NCBI GenBank assembly: GCA_002269645.1
Contig: NIVC01000251.1
Location: 690,699 to 754,698 of the forward strand
Direction of reading: 5' to 3'
Length of the DNA stretch: 64,000 nt
From: Macrostomum lignano
Lineage: Eukaryota
In this document: positions 599-64,000 of the stretch, piece by piece
Layout: each line of letters opens with the position of its first letter
Numbering within the stretch: position 1 is the stretch's first letter
Notes under the pieces: generated by a model
What the model was told of the DNA's origin: nothing
What the model saw: only the letters and a program-made list of their open reading frames with translations
Databases searched by the model: none
Made by a program: the position numbers and the translations under genes

Positions 599-35275
<34,677 letters not shown>

Positions 35276-43874: not shown

Positions 43875-45575
43875 CCACAGCGAACCACAGTCACTGAAGG
43901 TCATAGACAGTCACTGATGGTCATACACAGTCACTGAAGGTCATACACAGTCACTGAAGATCATATACAGTCACAGAAGATCATATACAGTCACAGAAGA
44001 TCATATACAGTCACCGGAGATCATACACAGTCACCGGAGATCATATACAGTCACAGAAGATCATACACAGTCACAGAAGATCATACACAGTCACCGGAGA
44101 TCATACACAGTCACCGGAGATCATACACAGTCACAGAAGATCATACACAGTCACCGGAGATCATACACAGTCACAGAAGATCATACACAGTCACCGGAGA
44201 TCATATACAGTCACAGAAGATCATATACAGTCACAGAAGATCATATACAGTCACAGAAGATCATACACAGTCACCGGAGATCATACACAGTCACAGAAGA
44301 TCATACACAGTCACAGAAGATCATACACAGTCACCGGAGATCATACACAGTCACAGAAGATCATATACAGTCACAGAAGATCATACACAGTCACCGGAGA
44401 TCATATACAGTCACAGAAGATCATATACAGTCACAGAAGATCATACACAGTCACCGGAGATCATATACAGTCACAGAAGATCATACACAGTCACCGGAGA
44501 TCATACACAGTCATTGAAGATCATACACAGTCACTGAAGATCATACACAGTCACTGAAGATCATATACAGTCACAGAAGATCATATACAGTCACAGAAGA
44601 TCATACACAGTCACCGGAGATCATACACAGTCATTGAAGATCATACACAGTCACTGAAGATCATACACAGTCACTGAAGGTCATACACAGTCACCGGAGA
44701 TCATACACAGTCACCGGAGATCATACACAGTCATTGAAGATCATACACAGTCACTGAAGATCATACACAGTCACTGAAGATCATATACAGTCACAGAAGA
44801 TCATATACAGTCACAGAAGATCATACACAGTCACCGGAGATCATACACAGTCATTGAAGATCATACACAGTCACTGAAGATCATACACAGTCACTGAAGG
44901 TCATACACAGTCACCGGAGATCATACACAGTCACCGGAGATCATACACACTCACTGAAGATCATACACAGTCACAGAAGATCATACACAGTCACCGGAGA
45001 TCATATACAGTCACAGAAGATCATATACAGTCACAGAAGATCATATACAGTCACAGAAGATCATACACAGTCACCGGAGATCATACACAGTCACAGAAGA
45101 TCATACACAGTCACAGAAGATCATACACAGTCACCGGAGATCATACACAGTCACAGAAGATCATATACAGTCACAGAAGATCATACACAGTCACCGGAGA
45201 TCATATACAGTCACAGAAGATCATATACAGTCACAGAAGATCATACACAGTCACCGGAGATCATATACAGTCACAGAAGATCATACACAGTCACCGGAGA
45301 TCATACACAGTCATTGAAGATCATACACAGTCACTGAAGATCATACACAGTCACTGAAGATCATATACAGTCACAGAAGATCATATACAGTCACAGAAGA
45401 TCATACACAGTCACCGGAGATCATACACAGTCATTGAAGATCATACACAGTCACTGAAGATCATACACAGTCACTGAAGGTCATACACAGTCACCGGAGA
45501 TCATACACAGTCACCGGAGATCATACACACTCACTGAAGATCATACACAGTCACTGAAGATCATACAGTCACTGA
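43875..45575. repeat. 20-bp minisatellite TCATACACAGTCACCGGAGA (and variants) with higher-order structure
   Basis: About 85 copies. Confidence 0.97.
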
Positions 45576-45939
45576 TGGAAAATATAAACAGTCCCTAAAG
45601 GTTATACAGAGTATCTGATAATGATGAACTTACGTCATAGAAGATTGCATGTACGTCATTGAATGTCATGCAACTGCAAGATGATAGAATGATTCAAGAG
45701 GCAACAGAGGGCAGTACACAGTTTGGAGCAAAAATTATCAAGCAATTTGTGCTTTCTGACAGTAATTCGGCTTCTCAATGCCTATTGCGTGTCAGCATGC
45801 GGTTACCTAAGAAGATGAAGATTAGAATTTTTTATACGTAATTTTTTATAGAATGCAAGACTGACATGGAGTACTGAATAGAGAATTCTTGTGAAATAAA
45901 GATCTCGACCTCGTAATAGTGTTAAATTGTATTTACTCT

Positions 45940-46537
<598 letters not shown>

Positions 46538-47754: not shown

Positions 47755-48345
47755 GAAGTGGAGAGGGAAGGAGAAAAGAGGAGAGGAGAAGAGAAGAGAT
47801 GAGAGGAGAGGAGATGAGAGGAGATGAGAGGAGAGGAGAGGAGATAAGAGGAGAGGATAGGAAAGGAGAGGAGATGAGAAGAGAGGAGATGAGAGGATAG
47901 GAGAGAAGCGGAGAGGAGAGGAGAGGACAGGAGATAAGATGACAGGAGATGAGAAGAGAGGAGATAAGAGGAGAGGATAGGAAAGGAGAGATGAGATGAG
48001 ATGAGAGGAGAGGAGAGGAGAGGAAAGGAGAGGAGATGAGAGGAGAGGAAAGGAGAGGAGAGGAGAGGAAAGTAGAGATGAGATGAGAGGAGAGGAAAGG
48101 AGAGGAGATGAGAGGACAGGAGATGAGAGGAGAGGAGAGGAAAGGAGAGATGAGATGAGAAGAGAGGAGAGGACAGGAGATGAGATGAGAGGAGAGGAAA
48201 GGAGATGAGATGAGAGGAGAGGAGAGGACTGGAGATGAGAGGAGAGGAGAGGACTGGAGATGAGATGAGAGGAGAGGATAGGATAGGAGAGAAGAGGAGA
48301 GGAGAGAAAAGGAGAGGAGAGGAGAGGATAGGAGAGGAGAGTGAG
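47755..48345. repeat. (GAGAG/GAGAT)n purine tract
   Basis: Low-complexity pentamer array. Confidence 0.92.
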
Positions 48346-51005: not shown

Positions 51006-51215
51006 TTACGGCGCCCAAACTCGCATTGAACAATCAGCTGATCCGGTGAATAAGCGGCTATTGCACACTGCCATCGCTGTCACAATGCCTTGATGCCGTT
51101 GCAAAGTTTGAGTGCGCAGCATATTGTGCAGGCTCCACACCGCTACCGACATGTCGTGCGACCCGGATAGCAGCTTCAGACCGGCGCTGGTTCGCATCAC
51201 AGACAGGCAACTCAC
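51006..51215 (-). CDS. TRAF7: TRAF7 exon 5 (last two WD40 repeats, stop)
   Basis: ttttag acceptor; TAA stop. Confidence 0.93.
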   Translation of the reverse strand: MSCLSVMRTSAGLKLLSGSHDMSVAVWSLHNMLRTQTLQRHQGIVTAMAVCNSRLFTGSADCSMRVWAP

Positions 51216-54200
51216 CTAAAAAGGTGAAAATTAAATTAATAATAACAATGAACCATGCTGAGTGAAAATCTCACTAGAATCTTATTTATGACCAAAGCTA
51301 GAATCTCATTATGACCCAAGTGAGAATCGCATTTATGACCTAATTGAGATCTTATTTATGACCAATGCTAGAATCTCATTTATGACCAATGCTAGAATCT
51401 CATTTATGACCAAAGCTAGAATCTCATTTATGATCCAAGCTAGAATCCCAATATGACCCAAGCTAGAATCCCATTATGACCCAAGCTAGAATCCCATTAT
51501 GACCCAAGCTAGAATCCCATTATGACCCAAGCTAGAATCCCATTATGACCCAAGCTAGAATCCCATTATGACCCAAGCTAGAATCCCATTATGACCCAAG
51601 CTAGAATCCCATTATGACCCAAGCTAGAATCTCTTTATGACAAAAGCTAGAATCCCATTATGACCCAAGCTAGAATCCCATTATGACCCAAGCTAGAATC
51701 CCATTATGACCCAAGCTAGAATCTCGCCATGACTGATTTAAAACTGATCACTAACCTGACTGGAGTGGCCTCTGAGCACATGAGACGGTCTGGTTGTAGC
51801 TGACGCAACCTCTTCAGTGCTGGTCACGGCCGATGAAGAGACTGCAGCCTCATCGTTACTATGCTCTCCATCAGTTTCGACAGCAGCAATGGCTGAAGCG
51901 CTGCCCAAAGCAGTTGCAGCGGTGCCAGCAGCAGAAACAACCGGTTCTTCCAGAGCTTCCCAAACCAGTAGGAAGCCGCAACCAGTGCCAGCAATGACAA
52001 AGTCTGGCAGAACTAGAACTGAATGCACATTATTGCCCTCCTCATCTGTGCACAATGAGCGCACAGTGGAGAAGTTACACAGATCGATGACTAGCACCGA
52101 GTTGCCGCAGCCAACGTACAGCAGCTGCTGGCTGACCACCAGGGCGCGAACCCAGCGCACAAATCCAGTTAGAGTACGCAGACAGATCCTGCTAGCCAGA
52201 TCCCAGACCTTCACCAGAGTGAATGAGCCCGAGAATAAATAGAGCTTGGAGACACACAGGGTGCTGACGCTGTCTGTGTGACCTTTGAGCGTCTGTCCAA
52301 TAGAGGGGGGAGGGGTGGGGATTGAGTAGAAACTGTAGACACAGGCTATAAGCTTAATTGCGCACCCGATAAGCATAGAGTAGCTTTGAAGAAATACCAA
52401 CAGACATTAGGTATCTCCTAACTATACCCAAAGACATAGAGTACCACCTAATAAATACGAGTACCTCACGGACATGTGGCCGATTAAATAAATACCTACG
52501 CGGATGGATAGTCAATAAATACCCAAGGACACAGACTAGATTAAACACATACCCAAGGACACAGAGTAGCTCAAACACATACCCAAGGACACATACTAGC
52601 TCAAACACATACCCAAGGACACATACTAGCTCAAACACATACCCAAGGACACATCTAGATTAAACACATACCCAAGGACACATACTAGCTCAAACACATA
52701 CCCAAGGACACAGACTAGATTAAACACATACCCAAGGACACAGAGTAGCTCAAACACATACCCAAGGACACATACTAGCTCAAACACATACCCAAGGACA
52801 GAGTAGATTAAACACATACCCAAGGACACAGACTAGCTCAAACAAATACCAAAGGACAGACTGGATCAAACACATACCCAAGGACACAAAACCGCTTAAA
52901 AACATACCCATGGACACATGCTAGCCTAAACACACCAAATAGAAGAGCCCCCACCTTCAAGCAGGTACCGAACTCCGCAGACGCGGGCGCCACATCCCAA
53001 ACTCGAATTGTATTATCCTGCGATCCAGAAAACAACACCGAACCAGTCAGCGCCAAGGACAACACGGGCCCGTCGTGTCCATCGAGAGTTTTCAGCAGCT
53101 CATTGCTACTGCTAACCTGCCACATTTTCACTGATTTATCGCCGCTAGCAGAGTACAGGTAGTCCCCGCCGCCCAGTAGGCACCAGATCGGGCCTCGATG
53201 ACCTACAAATGTACCTAGACATTTGAAGGTTTGCCAAACATTTCCTCCAGGCTGTACACTGGCTATAGATGACACCAGCTCGTTGACTACTACGATGGCT
53301 TCTTGTAGCCGATCTTGTTTGGCCAGCGAGTCCGCCAGGAGGTCCTGATGCTCAGCTTGGTTGATCTCCAGCAACTGTAGCCGGTCAGTCACGTGACGAT
53401 CAAGACGGTCGAGACGTTCGACAACGCCGCTGAGCATCACGCGTATGCGTTCGGATTCCGCCGTACGCTGTTCTAGCTGTTCTTCTAAGTGGCGAATCTG
53501 ATGGAAAATAGATAAAATACACGTGTTGCTTTATCACACTACTGAGTTAGTAATGCTGAACGTTTTTCGTCATAGGAGTCCTAAAAAATCACAGAGTTTT
53601 GAAAAATCTCAGAGTATTAAAGTCCCGAAATTTTGTATCTCTCTCTCTAAGTCTTTGATACCAAGTCTTCAAATCCCCAAAAAATCTCAAAGTCTCAAAG
53701 CCCCAAATAACCTGAGTTTTGAAGGCCCACCAAAAAATCTCAAAGTCCCGAAGTCTTAGAAAGTTCAAACTTTTGGAGTCCCAGAAAATCTTAAAGTCTC
53801 GAAGTCCCAAAAAATCTCAAAAGTCCCGGAGTCCCAAAAACTCAAAAGTCTCGAAGTCCCAAAAAATCTCAAAAGTCCCGGAGTCCCAAAAAATCTCAAA
53901 AGTCCCGGAGTCCCAAAAAACTAAAAAAACGCGGAGTCCAAAAAAATCTCAAAAGTCTCGAAGTCCCAAAAAACTCAAAAGTCCCGGAGTCCCAAAAAAT
54001 CTCAAAAGTCTCGAAGTCCCGAAAATGACGGCATAAACAAACCTGCTTCTCCATTCGCTGCCGGGCGCCAACGCAGACGCTGGAACAAGAAGTGCCATTG
54101 CCGCCGCAATCGGACTCGTGCTCCTGAAGATCACGCAGTTTCACAGTCAGCCCGCAGCCTCTGCTGCAAACTGCTGGACTATGCGGACAACAATTCTCGT

Positions 54201-55638
54201 GCTCCAACCGGTTGCCCAGACGTATTTCGGCGTTGCAACCGGAAGGATCAACTTCATAGCTGGAGCAGCCGCCTACCAGAGACGATGGAGATGTTAATCC
54301 GGAGTCTGGAGACTCAGCGTTCGGTCGTTTGACCCGGAGACCGTAGCGGCATCGAATGAGAAGGTCTCCAACTTGATCGCATAGTGCTAGATTGACAACT
54401 AGAGGCTTGGCAGGCACGTTGTGACGGGGGCAGGGCACTGGAGTGAAGGCGCGATTAAGAAAAGTTTGTATTAACTTTCTAGCAATGCTTTAGAGAGCGG
54501 TTTTTAGGTAATTGGGCCGATTTTCAAAGTGGTAATTGGGGCAATTTTTCAATGATAATTGGGGCCATTTTTCAATGGTAATTGGGGCCATTTTTCAATG
54601 GTAATTGGGGCCATTTTTCAATGGTAATTGGGGCCATTTTTCAATGGTAATTGGGGCGATTTTTCAATGGTAATTGGGGCGATTTTTAAAGCGGTAATTA
54701 GGGCGATTTTCAATGATAATTGGGGCGATTTTTAATGGTAATTGGGGCGATTTTCAAAGTGGTAATTGGGGCGATTTTCAAAGTGGTAATTGGGCCGATT
54801 TTCAAAGTGGTAATTGGGCCGATTTTCAAAGTGGTAATTGGGCCGATTTTCAAAGTGGTAATTGGGCCGATTTTCAAAGTGGTAATTGGGCCGATTTTCA
54901 AAGTGGTAATTGGGCCGATTTTCAAAGTGGTAATTGGGCCGATTTTCAAAGTGGTAATTGGGCCGATTTTCAAAGTGGTAATTGGGCCGATTTTCAAAGT
55001 GGTAATTGGGCCGATTTTCAAAGTGGTAATTGGGCCGATTTTCAAAGTGGTAATTGGGCCGATTTTCAAAGTGGTAATTGGGCCGATTTTCAAAGTGGTA
55101 ATTGGGCCGATTTTCAAAGTGGTAATTGGGCCGATTTTCAATGGTAATGGGGGCGATTATTCAGTGGTAATTGGGCCAATTTTTCAATGGTAATTGGGGC
55201 AATTTTTCAATGGTAATTGGGGCGAGTTTTCAATGGTAATGGGGGCGATTTTTAAAGCGGTAATTAGGGCGATTTTCAATGGTAATTGGGGAGTTTTTTA
55301 AAGTGGTAATTGGGCATTGGGGCGATTATTCAGTGGTAATTAGGGCGATTTTTCAGTGGTAATTAGGGAGATTTTCAAAGTGGTAATTGGGGAGTTTTTT
55401 AAAGAGATATCAAAGAGATATTTATCAAAGTACAAAGTGATTGGAATATTCTCTAAGAAATGACTACAGCAAAAAGCGTTCACCAACCAGTCTCATCCGC
55501 AATACACCGGTGACAGAAGCTGTCACCGCAAGAGGCTGTAAATGGATTTCTAAACACGTTGCCGCAGATTCTGCACAGCAAACCGTCTGGTGGCGGCGAG
55601 GCGAACACCGTCGGCGGCGGGTCAGCGTCGGCTTCCAT
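51006..55638 (-). CDS. TRAF7: TRAF7-like RING E3 ligase with C-terminal WD40 repeats (5 exons, 611 aa)
   Basis: Exons 55638-55488, 54437-54043, 53497-52955, 52292-51756 and 51215-51006 splice in frame (1836 nt). Motifs matching TRAF7: VFASPP..LLC, VVNLALCDQVGDLLIRCRYG, EVDPSGC, FKCLGTFVGHRGPIWCL, LTGFVRWVRALV, TQTLQRHQGIVTAMAV...VW. Confidence 0.95.
51270..51725. repeat. 23-bp minisatellite CCCATTATGACCCAAGCTAGAAT, TRAF7 intron 4
   Basis: Tandem array. Confidence 0.93.
51756..52292 (-). CDS. TRAF7: TRAF7 exon 4 (central WD40 repeats and low-complexity insertion)
   Basis: ggacag and gttagt; 537 nt. Confidence 0.92.
52515..52915. repeat. 30-bp minisatellite ACACATACCCAAGGACACAGACTAGCTCAA, TRAF7 intron 3
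   Basis: Tandem array. Confidence 0.93.
52955..53497 (-). CDS. TRAF7: TRAF7 exon 3 (coiled coil and first WD40 repeats)
   Basis: catcag and gtgggg; 543 nt. Confidence 0.93.
53575..54022. repeat. ~27-bp minisatellite AAAAAATCTCAAAAGTCCCGGAGTCCC, TRAF7 intron 2
   Basis: Tandem array. Confidence 0.9.
54043..54437 (-). CDS. TRAF7: TRAF7 exon 2 (RING end and TRAF zinc finger)
   Basis: ctccag and gtttgt. Confidence 0.92.
54505..55400. repeat. 24-bp minisatellite GGTAATTGGGCCGATTTTCAAAGT, TRAF7 intron 1
   Basis: Homogeneous core with degenerate flanks. Confidence 0.95.
55488..55638 (-). CDS. TRAF7: TRAF7 exon 1 (start codon and RING)
   Basis: MEADADPPPTVFASPPPDGLLCRICGNVFRNPFTASCGDSFCHRCIADET; gttggt donor in phase 1; absent from the ORF track. 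Confidence 0.88.
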
Positions 55639-55814
55639 GCATTTTAACAATATTTTCGATACATATCGGTTTTATGGTAATGGTTAGTTTAAAAGACTTA
55701 GCTTGTGAGACAATATATGTATGTACTAGCTAAATTCCTACATTATTTGGCTAGTTGTAAAAGTAGTTCAATAATAGTAGTATAGCATATTAAATATATT
55801 CAAAGCAACGTTAT

Positions 55815-56170
55815 AAAATTGGCGCCAAAATTAAGGAATGGCGCTAAACTATAGTGATGAATGGCGCCAAACTATAGTGATGAATGGCGCCAAACTATAG
55901 TGATGAATGGCGCCAAACTATAGTGATGAATGGCGCCAAACTAGTGATTAATGGCGCCAAACTATCGTAACGAATGGCGCCAAACTGTATAGTGATGAAT
56001 GGCGCCAAACTAGTGATTAATGGTGCCAAACTATCGTAACGAATGGCGCCAAACTGTATAGTGATGAATGACGCTAAACTGATATGAGCAATTGCGCCAA
56101 ACTATCGTGATGAATGGCGCCAAAACTATCGTGATAAATGGCGCCAAACTGAATTGAGCAATGGCGCTGA
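55815..56170. repeat. 23-bp minisatellite ATGGCGCCAAACTATAGTGATGA
   Basis: Tandem array upstream of TRAF7. Confidence 0.9.
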
Positions 56171-59642: not shown

Positions 59643-60626
59643 TATAGGATTTTTCGTTTGATTTCATAAAATAGCCATTTGATTTCGTCCATAGAAGTTG
59701 GCAGCGCGGCCATAGAGTCTATGGCAATAAAGTGCACTGTTTTCCGATTGAATTCATAACTTTGCCACTTCATTTCGACATACCCAGTAGAAAGGCAACA
59801 GAAAAGTCGATGCGCTTGTCCAGTACAGAAAGAACTGTTAAAAACAGAAAGCTGTGTATTTAAGTCACATGAGGAAGTAGGCAGTTCAACAGTGAAATCA
59901 GTTATGTCCGCCAAAGTTAATGCTCGTTCGCAGCAACAAGCTACAAATTTCACATTATCTGCTGCTCATTGATGCACAGGGGCAGAAACCGCATCACATG
60001 TCGTTCCTAGGCAAGGCACTTCGAGGCGGAAATTTCCTCTAGTGCAACGTAGCCGCAGCGGAAAAGCACCATGAGTCTCCACTGCGTTAGGTTGATGCCA
60101 TCAGGCGGATTGCTAAGTTCCTGTTGAAGCTCAGGTGTTGCTAGCTGGCGTTTAAGCGAAGCCTTGAGACAACTGTGTGCCTGCTCCGCGGCGTTAAGAA
60201 ATGGAGTACACTTCACTATGGAGTACACTGTCTGTTTGTTGATGTTGAGCCATCGTGCTATGTCCGTCACTTTCTCACCCCTGTTCATTGCTTCAATGAC
60301 AAGATGCCTTCTGTCGTTTCCAATGGACGCGTATGCAGCCATTTTTAGGCACACAAGGAAGGTGACTGTTGCCCAAGAAGAGGACACGTTCATATAGGCT
60401 TTTCATTTCTATGAGAGGTTTGGCCATAGATATTCACCCACTGATATCCCAGCCCCCTCTGGCAGTGTTTGAGCCACTCCGCACGCCAAGTCGAAATGAA
60501 GTAGCAAAGTTATGAATTCAATCGGAAAACAGTGCACTTTATTGCCATAGACTCTATGGCCGCGCTGCCAACTTCTATGGACGAAATCAAATGACAATTT
60601 TATGAAATCAAACGAAAAAACCTATA
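59643..60626 (-). mobile_element. Internally deleted Tc1/IS630-type DNA transposon, 137-bp TIRs, TA ends
   Basis: Near-perfect TIRs at 59643-59779 and 60490-60626; ORF 60393-60007 fuses an N-terminal HTH to the C-terminal PFLNAAEQAHSCLKA segment, homologous to ORF 32973-33362. Confidence 0.9.
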
Positions 60627-62454: not shown

Positions 62455-64000
62455 ATGACACAAGTTATTCGAGGCGATACAGTCTATAGCTTGGGTCCGT
62501 GCCTTGGCAAAGGCGGTTTCGGCACCTGCTACAAGGCGGTGGAGCGATCCTCAACGCACCCGTTGAGCGAGTAGTAGCTCTGAAGAAAATCAGCCAACAG
62601 ATGGTTAAAGAAGCGGCCAAGGAGCCGTACCTCAGATACGAGATCGCGCTGCACAGCCAGCTGGCACACCAAATGTCGTCGAACTTTTTCTGACATTCTC
62701 GAGCAACGACAGTATCTATTTTGTTCTCGAATATTGTAATAAGAAGTCGCTGGCAGACATCATTATCCGCTTTACTACTCTGCCAGTCGATGTGGCGGCT
62801 TACTACTTTTGCCAACTAATTGCTGGTCTAAAGTACATTCACGGGTGCCGAATTCTGCACAGAGATTTGAAGCTCAGCAATATCCTTGTCGACGCAAACG
62901 ACGTAGTAAAGATAACTGATTTTGGATTGTCCTGCACAATTACAAGAAGCTATTTGGAACGACACCTATCGTGTGGTACGCCGAATTACTTAAGTCCCGA
63001 AGTTCTGCTGAGACAGGGTCACACAGTTAAGTCAGACATATGGTCATGCGGAGTTGTACTATACGCGTTGTTTGGCGGAGTACCGCCTTTCCAAGCGGAA
63101 GAACTCTTGGAAATATATAGAAACATTGTGTCCGGTAGCTACCAATTTACAAAGTATCACACTGACGATCATCTTAAGCATCTGATAGCCCGACTGCTGC
63201 AACTAGATCAAGAGGAGAGACCGGAACTCGACGATATTCTGCAGCACGAGTTCTGTCGCTACGGAAAACAGTACGAACATCAGTTAATGCAAGACGAAAA
63301 ATCAGCAACTACATGCGCAAATCTAGGCAATAGTTCAAGCATTAGTACAATGTCGAAAAGCCTCACTAACTTGTTTGGCAAGCCTAAACAGGCGACAAGC
63401 CAGGAAAAACCGGAGCAAAACGAAAAGCATCAGAAAGCTTTTCATCCTTCAAACTTGAACGGTGTACCACGGAGCCTCACAGTTGTCGATTTAAAACTGC
63501 GGCGTACAACCAATCTACTGCAGTATTTTCGTAATAGACCAGCTTGGAAAAAGCGTGCTACAGACTTTCAAGCTGGCTGGCTAACTTGGTGGCGCGACAA
63601 GACCTCCACAGTTGGCTTCTATTATCAGTTGTCAACTGGTTACAACTGCGCTCTCTACAACGATGCCACCAGCTGTCTGTACCATAGAGAAACCGGACAG
63701 GCCCACTTTCTAAACCTGCAGTCAAGCCGACGCATTCACACCGAGAGCTCCGCTAATTTAGAGACGATCAACAAATTCTACGAACCAATGCTACGCGACA
63801 TTATCGAAGAGTTTCAAGACGTCTCATCGACAAATCAGCTTGGCGAGCAACTTAGCTGGGTGAGCCAGAACAATGGCCAAGGCAACGAAACAATCGACTA
63901 TCTCACTAGATGGACAACTTGTTGCAACGAAACCTATCGAGTATTCTATTTCTCGGATGACTCGATTCAAGTCAACTTTGCAACTGCGTTTGTGCTTCGA
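62455..64000 (+). CDS. Intronless divergent polo-like kinase (kinase domain and two polo boxes), 3'-partial, with two apparent 1-nt deletions (gene with assembly errors, or pseudogene)
   Basis: LGKGGFGTCY, VALK, EIALH, HRDLKLSN, DFG, CGTPNYLSPE, DIWSCG; PB1-like WLTWWRDKTSTVGFYYQLSTG..ALYND; PB2-like YLTRW...FSDDSIQVNF. The frame is open from about 62672 to the window end; shifts lie at about 62545-62570 and about 62670. Confidence 0.88.

What the first reader, a model, noticed from the sequence alone, without database searches (positions are those of the whole stretch)
54425..55580. TRAF7 RING has swapped its His and Asp zinc ligands (C3HC3D to C3DC3H)
Seen: splicing exon 1 to exon 2 gives C-RI-C-GNVFRNPFTAS-C-G-D-SF-C-HR-C-IADETVP-C-PR-H. 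Established: human TRAF7 reads ...CGHTFCRRC...CPVD, and in the RING cross-brace ligands 3, 4, 7 and 8 form the second Zn site. Inference: ligand 4 (H to D) and ligand 8 (D to H) changed reciprocally within the same site, preserving Cys2-His-Asp coordination. This looks like a compensatory swap. A standard RING pattern would miss it, and exon 1 is absent from the ORF track.
Basis: partly seen in the sequence, partly recalled or inferred. Interest (0 to 1): 0.72.

Follow-up and report, generated by a model that had tools for sequence, protein, structure and literature searches.

The report
Flatworm TRAF7 RING with swapped His/Asp
The Macrostomum lignano TRAF7 gene really does encode a RING finger whose second zinc site has Asp where relatives have His and His where they have Asp; this is a real, inherited and rare variant, but whether it is "compensatory" is only weakly supported.

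Summary
The window is Macrostomum lignano contig NIVC01000251.1. On the minus strand at 51006-55638 lies a five-exon, all GT-AG gene with TRAF7 architecture: RING, TRAF zinc finger, coiled coil, WD40 propeller. It is identical to GenBank model BOX15_Mlig018441g1.

Splicing exon 1 to exon 2 gives C22-x2-C25-x11-C37-G-D39-x2-C42-x2-C45-x7-C53-x2-H56. The Asp codon GAC and the His codon CAC are present at all four assembled loci of the three gene copies. GenBank's transcript-derived models use the same junction.

Named metazoan TRAF7s (human, sponge, Hydra, Lingula, Bugula) all have His at ligand 4 and Asp at ligand 8, so both changes are derived.

Among 150 family representatives, ligand 8 varies freely (D 85, C 22, H 8 or more) while ligand 4 stays His. 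The Asp-to-His change therefore needs no compensation. Asp at ligand 4 occurs only twice, here and in one marine choanoflagellate-like protist, and both times ligand 8 is His.

The likeliest history is a permissive His at ligand 8 followed by His-to-Asp at ligand 4. That would keep a Cys2-His-Asp site. Zinc binding itself is untested.

Verdict: a new variant of a known RING type, of modest interest.

The parts
51006..55638 (-). TRAF7 orthologue of Macrostomum lignano (BOX15_Mlig018441g1). It has 5 exons and encodes 611 aa: RING, TRAF zinc finger, coiled coil, WD40 propeller.
   Evidence: The gene model has GT-AG at every intron. It is identical to PAA46919.1/PAA87062.1. Pfam WD40 scores 4e-31. 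The best non-Macrostomum hit is Lingula TRAF7-like, 33% identity over 99% of the query.
55488..55638 (-). Exon 1: Met1 to Thr50 plus the first base of Val51. It encodes RING ligands 1-6 (C22, C25, C37, D39, C42, C45).
   Evidence: The sequence is 100% identical in L001, L006 and L007, and 99.3% identical in L005.
55522..55524 (-). Codon GAC = Asp39, at RING ligand position 4. Other TRAF7s have His here.
   Evidence: Read directly from the sequence. GAC is present in all four other loci. The position aligns with His in 128 of about 140 family members that have a residue there.
54438..55487 (-). Intron 1 (phase 1). It splits the loop between ligands 6 and 7. Most of it is a 24-bp minisatellite (54507-55404, 38 copies).
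54043..54437 (-). Exon 2: RING ligands 7-8 (C53, H56), the linker helix and the TRAF-type zinc finger.
   Evidence: PDB TRAF5 zinc finger matches at E = 7.8e-6.
54421..54423 (-). Codon CAC = His56, at RING ligand position 8. Metazoan TRAF7s and TRAF6 have Asp here.
   Evidence: Read directly from the sequence. CAC is present in all four other loci. The spacing C-P-x-[H/D]-x9-N matches Lingula and other TRAF7s.
52955..53497 (-). Exon 3: coiled coil and the first WD40 blades.
51756..52292 (-). Exon 4: WD40 blades, with an Ala/Ser-rich insert of about 50 aa.
51006..51215 (-). Exon 5: last WD40 blades and the TAA stop codon.

Best explanation
This is the real, expressed TRAF7 orthologue of Macrostomum lignano. 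Its RING finger keeps the normal cross-brace fold and six Cys ligands, but in zinc site 2 the two non-Cys ligands have changed places (C3-D-C3-H instead of C3-H-C3-D).

Shown:
- The sequence, the splice junction, and its presence in three gene copies at four assembled loci.
- Purifying selection on the gene.
- The derived state of both positions relative to other metazoans.
- A confident RING plus zinc-finger fold prediction that matches solved TRAF5/TRAF6 structures.

Inferred:
- Site 2 still binds Zn2+ through Cys37, Asp39, Cys53 and His56. That is the same Cys2-His-Asp set, with the same net charge, as in TRAF6 and TRAF7.
- The exchange is sterically cheap. From memory, the Asp O-delta and the His N-delta-1 through which RING histidines usually ligate both hang from C-gamma.
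- The likeliest order of events is D-to-H at ligand 8 first. That change is tolerated alone and recurs in the family. It made H-to-D at ligand 4 acceptable afterwards. This is permissive epistasis rather than strict mutual compensation.
- The residues that contact the E2 enzyme in other RINGs (Ile24 after ligand 1, Pro54 after ligand 7) are kept, so the domain most likely still works as an E3 ligase module.
For: - Gene model and identity to GenBank transcript-derived models.
- GAC and CAC at all four assembled loci of the three gene copies.
- dN/dS between copies is 0.10-0.13 overall, with no change at all in RING codons 22-56.
- AlphaFold2 gives mean pLDDT 90.8, and 95-97 across the RING. The best PDB matches are TRAF5/TRAF6 RING-zinc-finger structures (7l3l TM 0.73, 3hcs).
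- Family survey of ligands (4,8): (H,D) 85, (H,C) 22, (H,H) 8, (D,H) only in M. lignano and P0123, and no (D,D) or (D,C).
- P0123 (CGD...CLEH) occurs in two independent marine metagenome assemblies. Its nearest relatives are His-8 sequences of the choanoflagellate-like group.
- A separate clade with Cys at ligand 4 also mostly has His at ligand 8 (4 of 5).
- Asp at ligand 8 is an accepted zinc ligand of the C3HC3D type (TRAF6, 3HCT): PMC3166285. His or Asp at ligand 8 are also known variants in plant RINGs: PMC6118397.
Against: - No metal-binding or activity data exist.
- The structure tool returns no coordinates, so the geometry of D39 and H56 around a metal could not be measured.
- The association of Asp-4 with His-8 rests on one independent replication. 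The chance probability is about 0.06-0.1, given 8-13 His-8 lineages among about 128 His-4 representatives.
- The order of events in flatworms is unknown. No other platyhelminth TRAF7 could be retrieved.
- The N-terminal region of this protein is otherwise relaxed. About 45 aa of the second TRAF zinc finger are missing. dN/dS for residues 2-182 is 0.4-0.5, against 0.05-0.08 for the rest (small counts). That leaves room for a decaying RING.
Confidence: 0.5

Rival explanations
1. The two substitutions are independent and nearly neutral, with no epistasis. Ligand 8 drifts among D, H and C in this family. Ligand 4 happened to become Asp, which is an adequate zinc ligand whatever sits at position 8. 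The 'swap' is then a coincidence of two single-base changes (CAC to GAC and GAC to CAC).
For: Ligand 8 varies widely while ligand 4 stays His. Each change is one transversion. Only two Asp-4 lineages are known, so the association is statistically weak. One member of the Cys-4 clade (P0170) has Asp at ligand 8, which shows that a site without any His can exist.
Against: Both known Asp-4 lineages sit on His-8 backgrounds, although His-8 is a minority state (about 6-10% of representatives). No (D,D) or (D,C) combination was seen among 150 representatives. Ligand 4 is otherwise almost invariant, which argues that it is not free to drift.
Confidence: 0.28
2. The RING is degenerating. Asp39 is not a metal ligand, site 2 is weakened or lost, and this TRAF7 works mainly through its WD40 and coiled-coil parts as a scaffold, without E3 ligase activity.
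For: Part of the second TRAF zinc finger is missing relative to Lingula, Hydra, sponge and protist relatives. dN/dS is higher in the N-terminal 182 residues (0.4-0.5) than in the rest (0.05-0.08). Pfam RING models match only ligands 1-6, at marginal scores.
Against: All six Cys are retained, and the two remaining positions hold zinc-competent residues. The RING codons are unchanged in the three copies, and all the N-terminal replacements lie at residues 85-160, outside the RING. Ile24 and Pro54 at the E2 interface are kept. AlphaFold2 models the RING at pLDDT 95-97. The same arrangement is maintained in an unrelated protist found in two metagenomes.
Confidence: 0.18
3. It is an artefact: an assembly or sequencing error at one of the two codons, or a wrong exon 1-exon 2 junction.
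For: The WormBase/UniProt models (P0002-P0004, P0104) omit exon 1.
Against: The codons are identical at four loci of the assembly, including a paralogue diverged by dS about 0.05. The RNA-based GenBank models use the same junction. The splice sites are canonical. There is no other RING half anywhere in the window. Neither ligand codon lies at the junction.
Confidence: 0.02

Closest known systems
Metazoan TRAF7 (human TRAF7; Sycon, Hydra, Lingula and Bugula TRAF7)
   Same: The domain order is the same: RING, TRAF zinc finger, coiled coil, seven-blade WD40. RING spacing is the same, with six Cys ligands, the C-x-I-C and C-P motifs, and the linker N-x-A-x3-Q-x-G-x-L-x-I-x-C-x-Y-G. The C-terminal ...VW ending is shared. 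Identity to Lingula is 33% over the full length.
   Different: Ligand 4 is Asp rather than His, and ligand 8 is His rather than Asp. About 45 aa of the second TRAF zinc finger are absent. There is no long Ser-rich N-terminal extension, so the RING starts at residue 22. An Ala/Ser-rich insert sits in the propeller.
C3HC3D RING type (TRAF6; PDB 3HCS, 3HCT, 7L3L)
   Same: The predicted fold superposes on TRAF5/TRAF6 RING-zinc-finger structures (TM 0.58-0.73). Site 2 has the same composition, two Cys plus one His plus one Asp.
   Different: The His and Asp occupy each other's positions. Neither survey read here (PMC3166285, PMC6118397) lists a RING class with Asp at ligand 4, and a full-text search for such class names found nothing relevant.
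Choanoflagellate and other holozoan TRAF7-like proteins (Hartaetosiga, Salpingoeca, Stephanoeca, 'Clim') and the metagenomic protein P0123
   Same: His at or near ligand 8 is usual in this group (CPIH, CKSH, CPQH, CPSTTH). P0123 has exactly the same C3-D-C3-H pattern (CGDTFC...CLEH).
   Different: These are only about 30-35% identical to the flatworm protein and belong to a different clade, so the shared pattern is convergent. Most of them keep His at ligand 4.
Plant RING-D and other minor RING types (RING-S/T, RING-G, RING-v, RING-C2)
   Same: They set a precedent for non-Cys/His residues, including Asp, at RING metal-ligand positions.
   Different: RING-D has Asp at ligand 5, in site 1. None of these types has Asp at ligand 4.

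Membership tests
TRAF7 (RING-zinc finger-coiled coil-WD40 E3 ligase) | N-terminal RING finger with cross-brace ligand spacing | tested here: met
   The spacing is C-x2-C-x11-C-x-D-x2-C-x2-C-x7-C-x2-H. Pfam PF00097 scores 22.3 bits against a cut-off of 21 on the fragment. AlphaFold2 gives pLDDT 95-97, and Foldseek matches TRAF5/6 RINGs. Two ligand identities are non-canonical.
TRAF7 (RING-zinc finger-coiled coil-WD40 E3 ligase) | TRAF-type zinc finger(s) after the RING | tested here: met
   Residues 114-159 align to the TRAF5 zinc finger (7l3l) and to the family C/H columns. The second finger is truncated by about 45 aa.
TRAF7 (RING-zinc finger-coiled coil-WD40 E3 ligase) | C-terminal WD40 propeller in place of the TRAF-C/MATH domain | tested here: met
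   Pfam WD40 scores 4e-31 with five or more stretches, plus beta-propeller families, across residues about 270-611.
TRAF7 (RING-zinc finger-coiled coil-WD40 E3 ligase) | Closest relatives outside the species are annotated TRAF7 over the full length | tested here: met
   Lingula TRAF7-like hits at E = 4e-82 with 99% coverage, and JGI 'TRAF7' P0006 is also found. The top hits of the N-terminal profile include Sycon, Hydra and Bugula TRAF7.
C3HC3D RING type (TRAF6/TRAF7 type) | His at metal ligand 4 | tested here: not met
   Asp39 (GAC) in all copies.
C3HC3D RING type (TRAF6/TRAF7 type) | Asp at metal ligand 8 | tested here: not met
   His56 (CAC) in all copies.
C3HC3D RING type (TRAF6/TRAF7 type) | Two zinc ions bound in a cross-brace; E2-dependent ubiquitin ligase activity | not testable with these tools
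   This needs metal analysis, a structure and ubiquitination assays.

The most novel reading that the evidence does not exclude
The RING cross-brace tolerates permutation of its non-Cys ligands only if the site keeps one imidazole. On this reading, Asp at ligand 4 is allowed solely on a His-8 background, and this has happened at least twice independently, in a flatworm and in a choanoflagellate-like protist. That would be a natural, recurrent example of permissive epistasis inside a structural zinc site. It would also define an undescribed functional RING class, C3DC3H, which motif-based annotation misses.
Probability: 0.35. Interest if true: 0.55.

Novelty: new variant of a known kind. Interest (0 to 1): 0.4.

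Why it matters
RING fingers are among the most abundant E3 ligase domains. They are usually recognised by fixed Cys/His patterns, in which ligand 4 is treated as an essentially invariant His.

A naturally maintained RING with Asp at that position and His at ligand 8 would extend the accepted ligand repertoire. It would explain why this protein carries no RING annotation in public databases. It also offers a simple two-residue system for testing order-dependent (epistatic) evolution of a metal site, using the single and double swaps in TRAF6 or TRAF7.

The finding does not bear on any major open question. Its biological consequence for the flatworm is unknown.

Tried and rejected
1. A word-index homology search with only the RING and zinc-finger peptide found nothing, not even the species' own proteins.
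2. The third protein search, with an alignment of the window protein and P0107, returned the same WD40-dominated candidates and no new TRAF7. No other flatworm TRAF7 was obtained, so the swap could not be dated.
3. A metagenome scan for close relatives gave one locus, L008. On translation it is an unrelated C3HC4 RING.
4. A literature search for flatworm TRAF7 was unproductive. The listed papers were general flatworm papers, and the one that mentions TRAF7 at all, a planarian immunity review, only notes it as an atypical mammalian TRAF. A search for RING classes named C3DC4 or C3DC3H found no relevant hits.
5. I considered His43 (CGDSFC-H-RC) as a substitute ligand for site 2 and rejected it. 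It directly follows ligand 5, which belongs to site 1 at the other end of the domain. The second Asp-4 protein (P0123) has Lys there. This is inference from the cross-brace topology.
6. I looked for an alternative first exon that restores CGH. There is none in the 64-kb window.
7. I considered sequencing error and rejected it on the basis of four loci and transcript-derived models.
8. The structure tools give no coordinates, so metal-site distances could not be measured.

Full report
**What is in the sequence.**
The feature lies on the minus strand. A 56-aa ORF at 55480-55650 encodes MEADADPPPTVFASPPPDGLLCRICGNVFRNPFTASCGDSFCHRCIADET and runs into a donor, ACTG|gttggt. A 180-aa ORF at 53896-54438 begins just after an acceptor, ctccag|TGCCCTGCCCCCGTCAC.

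Joining the two at this phase-1 junction gives ...CIADET-V-PCPRHNVPAKPLVVNLALCDQVGDLLIRCRYG.... Three further exons follow, all with GT-AG introns. The complete CDS is 1836 nt and encodes 611 aa: exon 1 55638-55488, exon 2 54437-54043, exon 3 53497-52955, exon 4 52292-51756, exon 5 51215-51006.

The RING therefore reads C22-x2-C25-x11-C37-G-D39-x2-C42-x2-C45-x7-C53-x2-H56. Asp39 is GAC at 55524-55522 and His56 is CAC at 54423-54421. No other RING half exists in any frame of the window.

**Whose gene it is, and whether the sequence can be trusted.**
- The full-length product is 99-100% identical to Macrostomum lignano proteins.
- It equals PAA46919.1/PAA87062.1 (BOX15_Mlig018441g1), apart from the initiator Met.
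- The window contains NIVC01000251.1:738704-749333 as an exact substring.
- The Mlig_3_7 assembly holds four loci of this gene. Two are identical in CDS (L006, L007), one is Mlig018441g2 (L001), and one is the more diverged Mlig007688g1 (L005).
- All four have GAC and CAC at the two codons and the same exon boundaries.
- The GenBank models were derived from StringTie/TACO assemblies of RNA-seq and from mapped de novo transcripts (PMC5730564). The exon 1-2 junction therefore has indirect RNA support.
- The WormBase/UniProt models start at exon 2 and so miss the first RING half.

Artefact is essentially excluded.

**Family assignment.**
Pfam finds WD40 repeats (4e-31) and only partial, marginal RING matches covering ligands 1-6. 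The PDB sequence search finds the TRAF5 RING and zinc finger.

The best hits outside the species are Lingula 'TRAF7-like' (33% identity, 99% coverage) and other TRAF7s. An N-terminal alignment (A1) shows residue-for-residue correspondence through the RING, the linker helix and the first TRAF finger. It also shows that about 45 aa of the second finger are missing in the flatworm.

AlphaFold2 on residues 10-164, with a 29-sequence alignment, gives mean pLDDT 90.8 and 95-97 over the RING. The best structural matches are TRAF5/TRAF6 RING-zinc-finger crystal structures (7l3l TM 0.73, 3hcs).

The gene is a TRAF7 orthologue. It is not a member of the C3HC3D ligand class, because both defining non-Cys positions differ.

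**How unusual the ligand pattern is.**
A profile of the N-terminal region was run against 1.84 billion representative proteins. It gave 1,324 hits at E <= 1e-10, and I examined the best 150. I aligned them to the profile and read out the eight ligand columns.

| Ligand 4, ligand 8 | Count | Notes |
|---|---|---|
| H, D | 85 | the common state |
| H, C | 22 | |
| H, H | 8 | five more have C-x4/5-H spacing |
| H, E/S/T/other | a few | |
| C, H | 4 | one protist clade |
| C, D | 1 | same clade as (C,H) |
| D, H | M. lignano plus P0123 only | |
| D, D or D, C | 0 | |

Named anchors:
- Human/cetacean, Sycon, Hydra, Lingula and Bugula TRAF7 are (H,D).
- Pleurobrachia is (H,C).
- The choanoflagellates Hartaetosiga and Salpingoeca infusionum, and a 'Clim' protein, are (H,H).
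- Stephanoeca has CPSTTHD.

The flatworm state is therefore derived at both positions within Metazoa.

**Is it compensatory?**
Ligand 8 plainly varies with His-4 in place. The D-to-H change at ligand 8 therefore needs no partner change. Published surveys also list His and Asp as ligand-8 variants (PMC6118397; PMC3166285).

Ligand 4 is the constrained position. The only other Asp-4 protein is P0123 (CALC...CGDTFCKAC...CLEH). It occurs in two independent marine metagenome assemblies. Its nearest relatives are His-8 sequences of the choanoflagellate-like 'LPxGxxC' group. There, Asp-4 arose on a pre-existing His-8 background, independently of the flatworm.

P0107 is a marine metazoan TRAF7 from a JGI sample. 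It has (H,H) with CPIHD and is the closest complete N-terminus to the flatworm's, at 37% identity. It shows that the putative intermediate state exists in animals, but its taxon is unknown.

Together this favours a permissive sequence (H,D) to (H,H) to (D,H), rather than strict mutual compensation. The statistics are thin. The flatworm is the discovery case, so there is one replication, with a chance probability of about 0.06-0.1. The Cys-4 clade's preference for His-8 counts as one more, non-independent, hint.

**Mechanism proposed.**
Site 2 would be Cys37/Asp39/Cys53/His56. That has the same donor set and net charge as the Cys2-His-Asp site of TRAF6 and TRAF7. From memory, RING His ligands generally bind through N-delta-1, which is attached to C-gamma just as an Asp O-delta is. 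Either residue can then supply a donor atom from either backbone position with little rearrangement. This stereochemical argument is inference from general knowledge and was not measured here.

Ile24 and Pro54, which contact the E2 in other RINGs, are retained.

Between gene copies dN/dS is 0.10-0.13 overall. The RING has no substitution at all. The six to seven amino-acid replacements in the N-terminal 182 residues all lie at positions 85-160. The gene is clearly under purifying selection. The RING itself is too short for the copies to be informative about it.

**Rivals.**
- Independent neutral changes without epistasis remain quite possible (0.28).
- A decaying RING with a crippled site 2 is less likely, given the retained Cys set, the conservation and the convergent protist case. 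The truncated second zinc finger and the higher N-terminal dN/dS keep it alive (0.18).
- Artefact is about 0.02.

**Novelty and interest.**
The protein is deposited only as 'hypothetical protein' or 'TRAF-type domain-containing protein'. Its stored Pfam annotation lacks any RING family. I found no description of a RING class with Asp at ligand 4.

It is a new variant of a known kind. It offers a neat, testable case for metal-site evolution and a caution for motif-based RING annotation, but it is not a major surprise. I score interest at 0.4.

Noticed in passing
window 55633-55642 (minus strand); L005 2985-3000: The start-codon region differs between the gene copies by three changes within five bases. 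The window, L006, L007 and L001 read AAAATGCATG|GAAGCC. That gives a genomic ATG, no AG acceptor, and TGCATG, which equals the last 6 nt of the M. lignano spliced leader ...TTGCATG. The paralogue L005 reads AAAATTCCAG|GAAGCC, a good acceptor with no ATG. Trans-splicing of the leader onto L005 would supply the AUG and give the same N-terminus. It may also explain why GenBank calls these CDSs 'partial'. One possibility is that leader-derived sequence was copied into the genome; this was not tested.
   Followed up: partly
window 1-64000; e.g. 671-2140, 19960-21336, 43886-45567; gene introns 54507-55404, 53730-54025, 52519-52934, 51274-51723; 5' flank 55836-56150: The window is packed with more than 40 different minisatellite arrays of 19-30 bp units. 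Each of the four TRAF7 introns carries its own array, and these account for the different gene lengths of the copies (4.6, 5.6 and 7.4 kb). This fits the reported 15% simple and tandem repeat content of the genome.
   Followed up: partly
window 54043-54120 (minus strand; protein residues about 157-182): Relative to Lingula, protist and other TRAF7s, the flatworm protein lacks about 45 aa of the second TRAF-type zinc finger (CPHxxxGCxFxGxxxxLxxHLxxCxYE...). The N-terminal 182 residues also show higher dN/dS between copies (0.4-0.5) than the rest of the protein (0.05-0.08).
   Followed up: partly
window 51800-51960 (minus strand; protein residues about 480-530): An Ala/Ser/Thr-rich insert of about 50 aa (AAGTAATALGSASAIAAVETDGEHSNDEAAVSSSAVTSTEEVASATT) lies inside the WD40 propeller. 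It is absent from other TRAF7s, and some WormBase models splice it out.
   Followed up: no
window 60007-60393 (minus strand): A 128-aa ORF has helix-turn-helix matches typical of transposase N-termini (HTH_23 5e-6, HTH_28 1e-5, weak IS630/Sleeping Beauty HTH). It is probably a DNA-transposon remnant.
   Followed up: partly
window 62455-62700 (plus strand): A short ORF, MTQVIRGDTVYSLGPCLGKGGFGTCYKAVE..., looks like the glycine-rich loop of a protein kinase and is possibly the first exon of a neighbouring kinase gene. Pfam found nothing for the 39-aa piece alone.
   Followed up: partly
window 45939-46537 and 47760-48341: There are long simple repeats, (TAG)n with about 200 copies and (GGAGA)n with about 115 copies. 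They create long spurious ORFs on both strands.
   Followed up: no
L002 3358-4539 and L003 3457-4638 (marine metagenome contigs): An unidentified marine eukaryote, probably a choanoflagellate relative, encodes a TRAF7-like protein (P0123) with the same C3-D-C3-H RING (CGDTFC...CLEH). It appears in two independent assemblies (SOLA22 ERZ23498367; ERZ1764460).
   Followed up: partly
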